Source: Girardia tigrina
Taxonomy: Eukaryota
Assembly (NCBI GenBank): GCA_001938485.1
Contig: MQRK01236650.1
Span: 1 to 50,214, forward strand
Reading direction: 5' to 3'
Length of the DNA: 50,214 nucleotides
Shown here: positions 27,740 through 28,329 of the stretch, piece by piece
How positions within the stretch are numbered: position 1 is the stretch's first letter
Layout of the letters: every line of letters starts with the position of its first letter
Program-made: the position numbers and the translations under genes
The notes under the pieces: model-generated
Database searches by the model: none
The model's input: the letters and a program-made list of their open reading frames with translations, nothing else
What the model was told of the DNA's origin: nothing

Positions 27740-27744
27740 TTCGC

Positions 27745-27924
27745 ACCTTTCCGATCGACACAAGAAAAGTGCGTCTCCAAATTCAAGGAGAAATACAAAA
27801 TAATACGAATAAACAATTTTCTGTTAAACATGAAGAAGTGCTTGTCCTTTATCACGGTCTGAGTGCTGGGGTGATTCGTCAGGCATCTTATGGCACTATA
27901 AAAATGGGTTTATATGATACTATG
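27745..27924 (+). pseudogene. Mitochondrial carrier (SLC25; UCP/KMCP1-like) first-repeat fragment
   Basis: TFPIDTRKVRLQIQGE carries the PxDxxKxR signature, followed by LYHGLSAGVIRQASYGTIKMGLYD. No start codon, an apparent internal deletion, and no further repeats. Confidence 0.85.
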
Positions 27925-28269
27925 GAAACAAATCGAATATTTAAGATGACGAGCGAATCACAGCGATTTGAATTCATTAAATTTGGATGGATGGCGACTG
28001 CCGATTGTCGTGGATTGAGAATAGAATCCAACATTCTTTGAGGGTGAAGATCGATGAGTTAAAATATGTTTTTAAAGGTGATATATGCATGAAAAATTGA
28101 GACATTTTCTCAACGTGGTGTATTGTCGGCATTTATGTGTGTTCCACAACAATGACAGTCAACTGATTCTGTCGACATAGAGTCCTGGTCACTACAGCGG
28201 AAATGGCATGCTGAGTTGTACGCTGAATTCGGTCAAATTAAAACGTGAAATTCAAATTTTTTTATTTTT

Positions 28270-28329
28270 CCCTTAGACCTGACGCTCGCTCCCCATCACC
28301 GGCGTGCTGCACCCGCTCTTGCATCACCA
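28270..28329 (-). mobile_element. GC-rich element terminus homologous to 3393-3470
   Basis: Reverse complement TGGTGATGCAAGAGCGGGTGCAGC vs TGATGGTGCAGGAGCGGGCGCAGC (20/24, all transitions). Similarity continues after a ~17 bp indel. Confidence 0.75.

What the first reader, a model, noticed from the sequence alone, without database searches (positions are those of the whole stretch)
27740..28329. The same terminus lies beside a second, unrelated host-gene fragment (SLC25 carrier): candidate gene-capturing element family
Seen: 28270-28329 is a reverse-complement homolog of the GC-rich terminus at 3393-3470. The first 24 nt match at 20/24, all transitions, and similarity resumes after a ~17 bp indel. 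About 400 bp inside lies a start-less, internally deleted UCP/KMCP-like fragment. At both loci the fragment reads toward the shared terminus at a similar distance (~400-460 bp, one of them gap-estimated). Inference: one element family repeatedly picks up different host coding fragments in a fixed polarity. This would be a cargo or exon-shuffling system I cannot assign to a named family. The other end and TSD of this copy were not found.
Basis: partly seen in the sequence, partly recalled or inferred. Interest (0 to 1): 0.82.

Follow-up and report, generated by a model that had tools for sequence, protein, structure and literature searches.

The report
Mobile-element tail carrying host gene starts
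A short GC-rich end sequence marks a small family of inserted DNA elements, each carrying the beginning of a different host gene pointing toward that end; this resembles known gene-fragment-carrying transposons, but the family fits no named class.

Summary
3393-3480 and 28270-28329 are reverse-complement copies of one CpG-rich sequence, and their differences are mostly CpG decay. B lacks 17 nt that two other copies have.

A 95%-identical paralogous empty site at 13823-13827 shows that the first copy is the end of a discrete 1,193-bp insertion, 3393-4585. It is flanked by a 5-bp duplication (GTAGA). It carries the first 58 codons of an AP-3 sigma gene, from its ATG, reading toward the tail.

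The second copy follows an isolated SLC25-carrier piece in the same polarity. A third DNA copy from a metagenome (L040) and three database proteins attach the same tail to the N-terminal parts of three more proteins: sideroflexin, MAP65/PRC1 and an unknown protein. That makes five cargoes, all gene starts, all sense.

There are no inverted terminal repeats, hairpin, poly(A), ribozyme or Helitron ends. I favour an RNA route: host-gene 5' transcript parts joined to a roughly 90-125-nt 3' module and reverse-transcribed, as in LINE-1/SVA 5' transduction or template-switch chimeras. DNA-level capture and a solo-LTR reading remain open.

Copy number, an autonomous partner and the host species are unknown. 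This is a new variant of a known kind.

The parts
3388..3392 (.). Left copy of the 5-bp target-site duplication GTAGA at locus A
   Evidence: Three-way alignment of both junctions with the empty paralogous site (sequences).
3393..4585 (-). Element copy A: a complete insertion of 1,193 bp including a 225-N assembly gap (3628-3852, not filled). It begins TG and ends CA. The sense strand is minus.
   Evidence: It is absent from the 95%-identical paralogue at 13237-14007. BLAST homology to L040 starts exactly at 3393.
3393..3480 (-). Shared CpG-rich 3' tail, copy A (possibly extending to about 3486). On the sense strand it ends ...GCACCATCA.
   Evidence: 86% identity over 88 nt to L040 276-363, E=8e-27. 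Alignments.
3855..4028 (-). Cargo A: the first 58 codons of an AP-3 sigma adaptor gene, from its ATG. It runs into the N gap. It differs from its best relative at 4 of 58 residues.
   Evidence: Pfam Clat_adaptor_s profile positions 1-52 of 142, E=3e-12. 93% identity to P0001 residues 1-58. tblastn finds no more of the gene in the window.
4029..4585 (-). 557 nt of AT-rich sequence inside the insertion, upstream of the AP-3 sigma ATG. It could be a 5' leader, promoter region or element body; this is undetermined.
   Evidence: Sequence read. No similarity to L040 or locus B. No Pfam hit in its ORFs.
4586..4590 (.). Right copy of the 5-bp duplication GTAGA at locus A
13823..13827 (.). Empty site: a single GTAGA in the paralogous copy of the repeat that hosts element A
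   Evidence: (D7, D11, D15, D19).
27736..27960 (+). Cargo B: an isolated piece of a UCP/KMCP-type SLC25 mitochondrial carrier (first carrier repeat only). It lacks the N-terminal roughly 27 residues that its relative P0121 has.
   Evidence: Pfam Mito_carr profile positions 22-90 of 96. phmmer best hit is P0121 at 74-75% identity. tblastn with four carriers finds only this stretch.
28243..28329 (+). Shared 3' tail, copy B. The core is 28270-28329; weaker similarity reaches back to about 28243. It lacks 17 nt present in A and L040 and has lost the most CpGs.
27694..28329 (+). Candidate extent of element copy B (TG...CA flanked by TTTA at 27690-27693 and 28330-28333). This is weak: about 3 such sites are expected by chance in 4 kb.
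28330..28400 (.). 3' flank of copy B: TTTATG followed by a (TA)n microsatellite
   Evidence: D2.

Best explanation
The GC-rich 'terminus' is the conserved 3' end of a family of short non-autonomous mobile elements. It is about 90-125 nt long, CpG-rich, and ends ...GCACCATCA. The rest of each element is the 5' part of a host gene in sense orientation.

Shown:
- Copy A (3393-4585) is a discrete insertion with a 5-bp target duplication. It carries the start of an AP-3 sigma gene.
- Copy B is an older, CpG-decayed copy behind an SLC25-carrier piece.
- Relatives elsewhere carry the starts of sideroflexin, MAP65/PRC1 and an unknown protein.

Inferred mechanism: the elements are made through RNA. A transcript holding the beginning of a host gene becomes joined to the 3' module. 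This happens either by read-through or splicing into a module that lies downstream in the gene, or by a reverse transcriptase that starts on the module and switches template at a preferred point to a host mRNA, copying it to its 5' end. The 3' module is what a reverse transcriptase encoded elsewhere recognises. The copy is then inserted with a short duplication and is often shortened at the 5' end.

The result is dispersed, mostly dead gene starts. Some may bring their own start codon, and perhaps a promoter, to new places.
For: **A discrete unit with a true terminus.** Empty-site comparison and the 5-bp duplication define the unit. Homology to the independent copy L040 begins at the first inserted base, 3393.

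**Five different cargoes upstream of one tail.**
- AP-3 sigma, profile positions 1-52.
- SLC25 carrier, first repeat. Its relative P0121 starts at the true Met.
- An unknown ORF starting at Met, in L040 and P0272.
- Sideroflexin, profile positions 2-226 of 319, in P0273.
- MAP65/PRC1, profile positions 2-135 of 477, in P0274.

**Polarity.** All three DNA-ascertained copies (A, B, L040) have the coding piece reading toward the tail.

**Conservation only at the tail end.** Only the tail is conserved, and nothing is shared at the other end. A retroposon recognised through its 3' end would look like this.

**5' shortening.** B lacks the first roughly 27 codons that P0121 has, which fits 5' truncation.

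**Features of DNA transposons are absent.** There are no terminal inverted repeats and no Helitron ends.

**A short 3' repeat.** The last nine bases form three CAY triplets in A, B and L040, and also in P0272 if I back-read its protein.

**Published parallels.**
- LINE-1 chimeras carry first exons of genes, with 15 of 17 oriented in sense relative to the LINE-1 (10.1101/2025.02.02.635956).

**Association statistic.** Only 3 non-transposon Pfam families occur among 129 window ORFs, and 2 of them sit beside the 2 tails. My rough chance estimate for that, with this orientation, is about 3e-4.
Against: - There is no direct sign of RNA origin. No poly(A) is present, intron loss could not be tested, and the host gene structures are unknown.
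- Copy A holds 557 nt upstream of the ATG. That is long for a 5' leader and could be promoter DNA, which would favour DNA-level capture.
- Copy A begins TG, ends CA and has a 5-bp duplication, which is the signature of integrase-type insertion.
- The tail shows no stable or conserved fold (z-scores +0.75, -0.42 and -0.30) and matches no Rfam family.
- No autonomous partner with this tail was found.
- Helitrons in bats also prefer gene 5' ends (PMC4224331), so a bias toward gene 5' ends does not separate RNA from DNA routes.
- Three of the six cases were found through proteins, so their polarity is biased by the method.
- The sample is tiny.
Confidence: 0.5

Rival explanations
1. DNA-level capture. 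The tail is one end of a DNA transposon, rolling-circle-like or of another unrecognised type. When it moves it takes along neighbouring genomic DNA, preferentially promoters and first exons, as bat Helitrons do.
For: - Copy A contains 557 nt upstream of the ATG with a TATA-like motif about 65 nt before it. This looks like promoter DNA.
- Helitron exemplars share only short ends, carry heterogeneous host pieces, and over-represent promoters, 5' UTRs and first exons. Parent genes there have a Helitron 3' end beside them (PMC4224331).
- The cargo is different in nearly every copy seen.
Against: - Helitron hallmarks fail at the one fully bounded copy. It has a clean 5-bp duplication. No A|T dinucleotide occurs at any possible junction of the empty site. 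The 3' end is ...CATCA rather than CTRR, and there is no 3' hairpin.
- There are no terminal inverted repeats for a cut-and-paste transposon.
- No second conserved end is shared between A, B and L040.
Confidence: 0.2
2. LTR-type element. Copy A is a solo long terminal repeat. The conserved tail is its U5 end, and the variable part is a U3-R region that different lineages have replaced with host promoter and first-exon sequence. Insertion is by an integrase.
For: - Copy A starts TG and ends CA and has a 5-bp duplication, the classical integrase signature. I estimate the chance of TG...CA from base composition at about 0.3% before allowing for the several signatures I looked for.
- All copies end in CA.
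- The length of about 1.2 kb fits an LTR.
- The window is rich in LTR-retrotransposon remnants.
Against: - No paired copy of any cargo plus tail unit was seen.
- No primer-binding-site-like TGG follows the tail in A, B or L040.
- The terminal inverted repeat is at best 3 of 4 bases.
- In L040 the only polymerase-like piece lies on the opposite strand.
- LTR families are normally homogeneous along their whole length, not only over the last 90-125 nt.
Confidence: 0.12
3. Coincidence. The tail is a small, common repeat (SINE or MITE-like) scattered everywhere. The neighbouring gene pieces are unrelated pseudogene debris, or real exons read through by gene callers.
For: - The window is a transposon graveyard.
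- The protein-derived cases are biased to sense orientation.
- A third host-like piece, WDR36-like at 25239-25439, has no tail near it.
Against: - The empty site shows that the gene piece and the tail lie inside one inserted unit.
- All three copies found by DNA have a coding piece within a few hundred bases, pointing at the tail.
- In P0273 and P0272 the coding homology or ORF runs straight into the tail.
- Every identifiable cargo starts at profile position 1-9 of its family.
Confidence: 0.08

Closest known systems
LINE-1 5'-transduction / mRNA-LINE-1 chimeric insertions (Law & Burns, bioRxiv 10.1101/2025.02.02.635956); SVA exon trapping (MAST2 exon in SVA_F1, from my memory, not checked here)
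   Same: The first exons of host genes, in sense orientation, are fused upstream of a retroelement and inserted with target duplications. Of 17 human cases, 15 map to transcript starts. The fused promoter or first exon may drive further copies.
   Different: - Here only about 90-125 nt of element is present, not a near-full-length LINE.
- There is no poly(A).
- The duplication is 5 bp rather than 14-17 bp.
- Chimeras are not rare by-products: all three copies found by DNA are chimeras.
- No splice-site evidence could be obtained.
Template-switch chimeric retrogenes (Buzdin-type; Magnaporthe MGL-LINE / WEIRD / Mg-SINE chimeras, PMC2104539)
   Same: The 3' part is a retroelement 3' end and the 5' part is a copy of another cellular RNA, directly fused and flanked by short direct repeats. 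In Magnaporthe the switch occurs at specific sites in the first template. This matches the near-constant inner edge of the tail in L040, P0272 and P0273.
   Different: The 5' partners here are protein-coding mRNA starts rather than one abundant non-coding RNA. The parent LINE is unknown.
Helitron gene capture (Helibat; PMC4224331)
   Same: Family members share only short ends and their internal sequence is heterogeneous host DNA. There is a strong bias toward promoters, 5' UTRs and first exons. Empty sites are used to prove mobility, as was done here.
   Different: The Helitron insertion and end signatures were tested here and are not met: a duplication is present, the site is not A|T, there is no CTRR end, and there is no hairpin.
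Pack-MULE / Pack-TYPE DNA transposons (PMC5861414, PMC8903248, abstracts only)
   Same: These are non-autonomous elements whose bodies are host gene fragments.
   Different: They have long terminal inverted repeats and 9-11-bp (MULE) or other fixed duplications. Neither is seen here.
SINE/LINE pairs with a shared 3' tail, and non-autonomous Penelope-like elements that share only the 3' end with their autonomous family (PMC8557442)
   Same: - Only the 3' end is conserved.
- 5' truncation is frequent.
- PLEs often carry an inverted 5'-truncated copy at the 5' end, and Naiads prefer (TA)n targets.
- L040 has a polymerase-like piece in inverted orientation beyond the cargo's 5' side, and copy B abuts (TA)n.
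   Different: - There is no tRNA, 7SL or 5S head.
- There is no hammerhead ribozyme.
- My reading of the L040 polymerase piece as Penelope-like rests on a remembered motif. Pfam did not confirm it.

Membership tests
Helitron | Insertion between host A and T without target-site duplication | tested here: not met
   The filled and empty sites show a 5-bp duplication, GTAGA. No A|T dinucleotide exists at any junction position on either strand.
Helitron | 5'-TC start and 3'-CTRR end | tested here: not met
   The 3' end is ...GCACCATCA in A, B and L040. A TC start is possible only under one shifted parse, and that parse still fails the other two features.
Helitron | GC-rich hairpin 10-20 nt before the 3' end | tested here: not met
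   Folding the three tails gives no stable or shared hairpin (z-scores +0.75, -0.42, -0.30). The only small stem lies in the 17 nt that B lacks.
Cut-and-paste DNA transposon / Pack-MULE type | Terminal inverted repeats at both ends | tested here: not met
   The ends of copy A (3393... and ...4585) share about 4 of 11 bases in inverted orientation. The repeat finder lists no inverted pair joining them.
Cut-and-paste DNA transposon / Pack-MULE type | Family-specific fixed duplication (TA, TTAA, 8 bp, 9-11 bp) | tested here: not met
   The duplication at A is 5 bp. Five-bp families such as Transib or Ginger2 (from my memory) need inverted repeats, which are absent.
Classical processed pseudogene (LINE-1 type) | Full or 5'-truncated mRNA copy ending in poly(A) | tested here: not met
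   The cargoes are gene starts cut off at their 3' side. The 3' end is the shared GC-rich tail and there is no A-run.
Retroposon recognised through a LINE/PLE-type 3' tail (SINE-like; 5'-transduction or template-switch chimera) | Conserved 3' end, variable or truncated 5' end, and a short duplication of variable length | tested here: met
   The tail is shared by A, B and L040 while everything upstream differs. The duplication at A is 5 bp. B lacks the first roughly 27 codons present in P0121. The length of the duplication at B and L040 was not determined.
Retroposon recognised through a LINE/PLE-type 3' tail (SINE-like; 5'-transduction or template-switch chimera) | An autonomous element in the same genome with the same 3' tail | tested here: inconclusive
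   None is present in the window or in L040. The protein searches were limited to 110-544 aa, so a long polymerase ending in this tail would have been missed. The genome itself could not be searched.
Retroposon recognised through a LINE/PLE-type 3' tail (SINE-like; 5'-transduction or template-switch chimera) | Cargo derived from spliced RNA (introns absent, starts at the transcription start) | not testable with these tools
LTR retrotransposon (solo LTR) | TG...CA ends with a 4-6-bp duplication | tested here: met
   Copy A begins TG, ends CA, and is flanked by 5 bp.
LTR retrotransposon (solo LTR) | Paired identical LTRs around gag/pol, with a primer-binding site after the 5' LTR | tested here: inconclusive
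   No pair exists in the window or in L040. No TGG-type site follows the tail in A, B or L040. With only three DNA copies, absence is weak evidence.
Penelope-like element, non-autonomous derivative / retrozyme | Hammerhead ribozyme in the terminal repeat; pseudo-LTR or tandem arrangement | tested here: not met
   Rfam reports no hammerhead at gathering or E-value thresholds in the window loci or L040. There are no tandem copies. Naiad-type PLEs also lack canonical hammerheads (PMC8557442), so this does not exclude all PLEs.

The most novel reading that the evidence does not exclude
This is a retroposon family whose only heritable part is a roughly 100-nt 3' recognition module. It regularly, not exceptionally, becomes fused at a fixed point to the capped 5' portions of host mRNAs. 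Nearly every insertion then plants a different gene start (start codon, perhaps a promoter-proximal leader) at a new site. That would be a dedicated generator of 5'-exon shuffling, with no tRNA, 7SL or 5S head and no poly(A).
Probability: 0.25. Interest if true: 0.75.

Novelty: new variant of a known kind. Interest (0 to 1): 0.58.

Why it matters
Elements that carry host gene pieces are a main source of exon shuffling, new promoters and chimeric transcripts. In animals the well-documented cases are Helitrons (bats) and rare LINE-1/SVA 5' transductions.

Here, in an AT-rich invertebrate-type genome, all six tail-bearing sequences examined carry a gene start, drawn from five different genes, behind one tiny conserved end. 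If a genome-wide census confirms this, gene-start capture is the rule for this family rather than an accident.

Such a family would give a natural data set for two questions. How do 3'-end-recognising reverse transcriptases pick up cellular RNAs? How often do dispersed start-codon-bearing pieces seed new genes?

There is also a practical point. These copies will be mis-annotated as truncated AP-3 sigma, SLC25, sideroflexin or PRC1 genes. Four such calls already sit in public protein collections (P0121, P0272, P0273, P0274).

Tried and rejected
The DNA of P0001, P0121, P0272, P0273 and P0274 could therefore not be read, and the host species could not be named.
Forty-one are chance hits in 53-76% GC contigs, presumably bacterial, and only L040 is real.
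- The same or a related motif found nothing in viral contigs or in bacterial/archaeal genomes.
- The search motifs were short degenerate strings built from positions where the two window copies agree. No consensus of the element was built or saved.

**Searches for more tail-bearing proteins**
- The tail-only protein search returned only the three proteins already known. The allowed length range was 110-350 aa, so longer proteins, including a possible polymerase ending in this tail, were not seen.

**RNA features**
- Rfam and tRNA scans found nothing real. The weak hits are (TA)n artefacts.
- Folding of the tail shows no structure above shuffled controls. With three copies, covariation cannot be tested.

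**Other readings considered and dropped**
- Tail as a protein-coding remnant: the frame is not kept between A and B because of the 17-nt indel and a C-run length change. I dropped this idea.
- Helitron, TIR transposon and classical processed pseudogene: each was tested and not met (see the membership table).
- 'Deletion in the 13.8-kb copy rather than insertion in A': this is possible in principle. It is unlikely, because the boundary coincides to the base with the end of homology to L040 and B.

**Target duplications and further copies**
- For B, TTTA|TG...CA|TTTA is a candidate, but about 3 are expected by chance. TTTATG plus TG at 24243 would give a 4.1-kb unit of mixed debris, which I judge implausible.
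- For L040, none was found.
- A third, diverged tail near the WDR36-like piece: none.

**The unknown cargo**
- Structure prediction of P0272 gave mean pLDDT 29.6, which is unusable. No fold search was run.
- A PDB sequence search gave nothing meaningful.

**The L040 polymerase-like piece**
- Pfam did not confirm it, even at E up to 10.

**Literature**
- A search for the metagenome accession prefix found nothing.

**Other limits**
- The N gap at 3628-3852 was left as it is.
- No contig looked human.
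Full report
**1. The observation**

The window is AT-rich (about 27% GC), holds six N gaps, and is full of transposon remnants.

The first 24 nt match at 20/24, and all mismatches are transitions. A 17-column gap follows, and similarity resumes after it.

Two sub-motifs from locus A occur, with up to three mismatches, only at these two places. 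One hundred dinucleotide-preserving shuffles expected none. A scan of both strands with a scoring scheme that forgives transitions finds no third copy in the window.

Both neighbouring coding fragments are real:
- 27703-28038(+) matches Pfam Mito_carr (E=6e-9).
- 3855-4028(-) matches Clat_adaptor_s (E=3e-12).

**2. Locus A is a bounded insertion**

The repeat finder showed that 2814-3392 and 4586-4770 are about 95% identical to one continuous stretch, 13237-14007 (D7, D11, D15, D19). Reading the three junctions and aligning them shows:
- the copy at 13.8 kb has a single GTAGA (13823-13827);
- locus A has GTAGA at 3388-3392, then 1,193 bp (3393-4585, including the 225-N gap that I left untouched), then GTAGA again at 4586-4590.

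The inserted unit begins TG and ends CA. On its sense (minus) strand it has this order:
- 557 nt of AT-rich sequence;
- the ATG and first 58 codons of an AP-3 sigma subunit;
- the gap;
- about 140 nt with no recognisable content;
- the GC-rich tail at the very end.

The best relative of the coding piece is P0001, a 220-aa AP-3 sigma from a JGI sample. It is 93% identical over residues 1-58. Named relatives from nematodes, mites, flatworms and rotifers reach only 72-79%. tblastn with P0001 finds nothing of residues 59-220 anywhere in the window. The gap could hide at most about 75 codons.

A deletion in the 13.8-kb copy between two chance GTAGA repeats would give the same picture. However, homology to an independent copy (next section) starts at exactly base 3393. 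The boundary is therefore a true element end.

**3. Locus B**

tblastn with four carrier proteins maps homology to 27736-27960 only. This is the first of the three carrier repeats. No other repeat is present in the window, so this is an isolated piece and not an exon of a local gene.

Its closest relative among 1.8 billion representatives is P0121 (96 aa, ENA metagenome, 74-75% identity). It also has about 27 further N-terminal residues from a start Met.

From this I conclude that the 'deletion' predates this copy, that the carrier piece exists in at least two copies in nature, and that the window copy is shorter at its 5' side.

The tail ends at 28329 and is followed by TTTATG and a (TA)n run. 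I could not fix the other end. TTTA|TG...CA|TTTA (27690 and 28330) is a candidate, but about three such sites are expected by chance in 4 kb.

**4. Copies elsewhere**

Forty-one lie in 53-76% GC contigs and align no better than chance. One, L040 (1,871 nt, 33% GC), matches locus A at 86% over 88 nt with E=8e-27 (3393-3480 against 276-363). L040 contains the 17 nt that B lacks, so B has a deletion.

In L040 a 311-codon ORF starts at a Met and reads into the tail. A protein search with that ORF found the following:
- **P0272:** the same protein, nearly identical, with one in-frame indel of about 110 codons and a different sequence after the tail.
- **P0273:** sideroflexin profile positions 2-226 of 319, E=4e-77, followed directly by the tail.
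- **P0274:** MAP65/PRC1 profile positions 2-135 of 477, followed by the tail.

A second search restricted to the tail peptide added nothing new within its 110-350-aa length limits.

In total, six tail-bearing sequences carry five different cargoes. Every identifiable cargo begins at position 1-9 of its family profile. In P0272, L040 and P0273 the inner edge of the shared part is the same (…SLEVKILNVT… in that reading frame). This gives a module of about 125 nt. In the older copies A and B, similarity fades after about 90 nt.

**5. Why the differences are transitions**

The L040 tail has 12 CpGs in 88 nt (observed/expected 1.4). A has 8 CpGs in 88 nt and B has 5 in 71 nt. At the 14 CpG columns of the three-way alignment, the variants are almost all TG or CA.

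The 'all transitions' pattern is therefore ordinary CpG decay. This implies that the host methylates these copies in the germ line and that B is the oldest of the three.

**6. What it is not**

- *RNA families:* no Rfam family, tRNA or hammerhead is present. There is no stable or shared fold.
- *Cut-and-paste transposon:* there are no terminal inverted repeats.
- *Helitron:* there is a 5-bp duplication, no A|T at any possible junction, no CTRR end and no 3' hairpin.
- *Ordinary processed pseudogene:* the cargo is the 5' part of the gene, and the 3' end is the tail, not poly(A).

**7. Is the association more than chance?**

I scanned all 129 stop-to-stop ORFs of at least 58 aa in the window against Pfam. 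Only three non-transposon families appear:
- the AP-3 sigma piece;
- the carrier piece;
- a WDR36/Utp21 propeller piece at 25239-25439(-). It has no tail near it.

With three such pieces in 50 kb, my rough estimate is about 3e-4 for the chance that both tails have one within 650 nt on their inner side, pointing at them. The third DNA-ascertained copy, L040, shows the same arrangement.

The three protein-ascertained cases add cargo diversity but not independent evidence of polarity. They could only be found in sense orientation and in one reading frame.

**8. Mechanism**

What is shown: a discrete inserted unit, a conserved 3' end, variable bodies made of host gene starts in sense orientation, and a short duplication.

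What I infer is an RNA route. A reverse transcriptase that recognises its template through a specific 3' end needs only that end to be conserved. Copies made this way are often 5'-shortened, as B is relative to P0121. The last nine bases form three CAY triplets in A, B and L040, the kind of short 3' repeat that many non-LTR elements carry (the latter point is from my memory).

Two known processes would put a gene start upstream of such an end:
- **5' transduction or exon trapping.** Transcription starts at a host promoter and runs, or splices, into an element lying downstream. In the human genome, 15 of 17 LINE-1 chimeras with unique RNAs map to the beginning of transcripts, and 15 of 17 are in sense orientation relative to the LINE-1 (10.1101/2025.02.02.635956).
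- **Template switching.** Reverse transcription switches from the element's RNA to a cellular RNA. In Magnaporthe this happens at specific sites (PMC2104539). That would explain the constant inner edge of the module.

Unlike those precedents, all three DNA-ascertained copies here are chimeras, and no common element body lies upstream of the tail. The module itself therefore seems to be the whole conserved element.

There are hints toward a Penelope-like partner. PLE insertions are often 5'-truncated and carry an inverted truncated copy at the 5' end. Naiad-type PLEs prefer (TA)n targets, and non-autonomous forms share only 3' ends (PMC8557442). L040 has a polymerase-like piece in inverted orientation beyond the cargo's 5' side, and B abuts (TA)n. 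These hints are weak. I recognised the L040 piece from a remembered motif, and Pfam did not confirm it.

**9. Rivals**

- **DNA-level capture.** This remains possible because copy A holds 557 nt upstream of the ATG with a TATA-like motif. Bat Helitrons show the same preference for promoters and first exons (PMC4224331). The Helitron signatures themselves fail here.
- **Solo-LTR reading.** This is suggested by TG...CA ends plus a 5-bp duplication. No paired copy, primer-binding site or same-strand gag/pol was seen.
- **Pure coincidence.** The empty site, which puts gene piece and tail in one unit, argues against this.

I could not test intron loss, transcription starts, copy number or the existence of a partner.

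**10. Verdict**

It is not categorically new. Gene-fragment-carrying elements and 5' transduction are established, and this looks like a new variant: a tiny 3' module, no poly(A), and gene starts as the regular body. Its class is still open.

Whether cargo-bearing copies multiply further is suggested only by two observations: two near-identical copies of the unknown ORF with different 3' flanks, and two diverged copies of the carrier piece. Neither proves it.

Noticed in passing
window 25239-25439 (-): An isolated WDR36/Utp21 first-beta-propeller piece. Pfam PF25171 matches profile positions 93-147 at E=3.5e-6, below the gathering score. It also matches human WDR36 residues 188-243 in PDB entry 7mq8. 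It is the only other non-transposon coding piece in the window. No tail copy lies near it, and no further WDR36 parts were recognised.
   Followed up: partly
window 2814-3392 + 4591-4770 versus 13237-14007: A repeat of about 770 bp present twice at about 95% identity. It hosts element A and supplied the empty site. Its own nature was not determined.
   Followed up: partly
window 33040-34148 and 39244-40355: Direct repeats of about 1.1 kb (85-91% identity) with 6.2-kb start-to-start spacing. This could be an LTR pair or a tandem duplication. Between them lie a 497-codon open frame rich in hydrophobic stretches with no Pfam match (35021-36511 +) and ORFs that looked polymerase-like to me but gave no Pfam hit (36929-37498 +). 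An integrase piece follows at 40335-40724.
   Followed up: no
window 1882-2640 (+), 30437-30571 (-), 31326-31673 (+): Mariner-type transposase remnants. Pfam finds HTH_48 and Transposase_1. The 30.4-kb piece was recognised by eye only.
   Followed up: no
window 8174-8920 (+), 27006-27299 (+), 26134-26307 (-): Retrotransposon remnants: a gag with two zinc knuckles, a weak RT_RNaseH_2 piece 400 bp upstream of locus B on the same strand, and a weak RVT_1 piece on the other strand.
   Followed up: no
window 16349-16631 and 25716-25911: GC-richer arrays of a 21-nt unit (GGTTACCATAGCAACGGTC-like) at two distant places. In addition, 16607-16766 is an inverted match (86%) to 38655-38814.
   Followed up: no
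window 1-374 and 47041-47946: Tandem arrays with units of about 47 nt and 41 nt. The second array is duplicated with 679-bp spacing around small N gaps.
   Followed up: no
L040 41-75 (+): Directly after a (TA)n run comes TA followed by CAGTGCGTTCAAAAAGT.... From memory this resembles a Tc1-type terminal inverted repeat, so the tail-bearing copy in L040 may be nested in or beside a Tc1-like element.
   Followed up: no
L040 1699-1863 (+): A short open frame with ...LYGLPKVHKDGIPMRPVIS..., lying in inverted orientation beyond the 5' side of the cargo ORF. I remember this motif from Penelope-like reverse transcriptases. Pfam gives no hit even at E up to 10.
   Followed up: partly
proteins P0121, P0272, P0273, P0274 (public collections): These gene calls are cargo or cargo-tail chimeras that public sets present as ordinary proteins. 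The tail is translated as ...PRPD.RSPSPACRGHKIAAPALAPS in P0272-P0274.
   Followed up: partly
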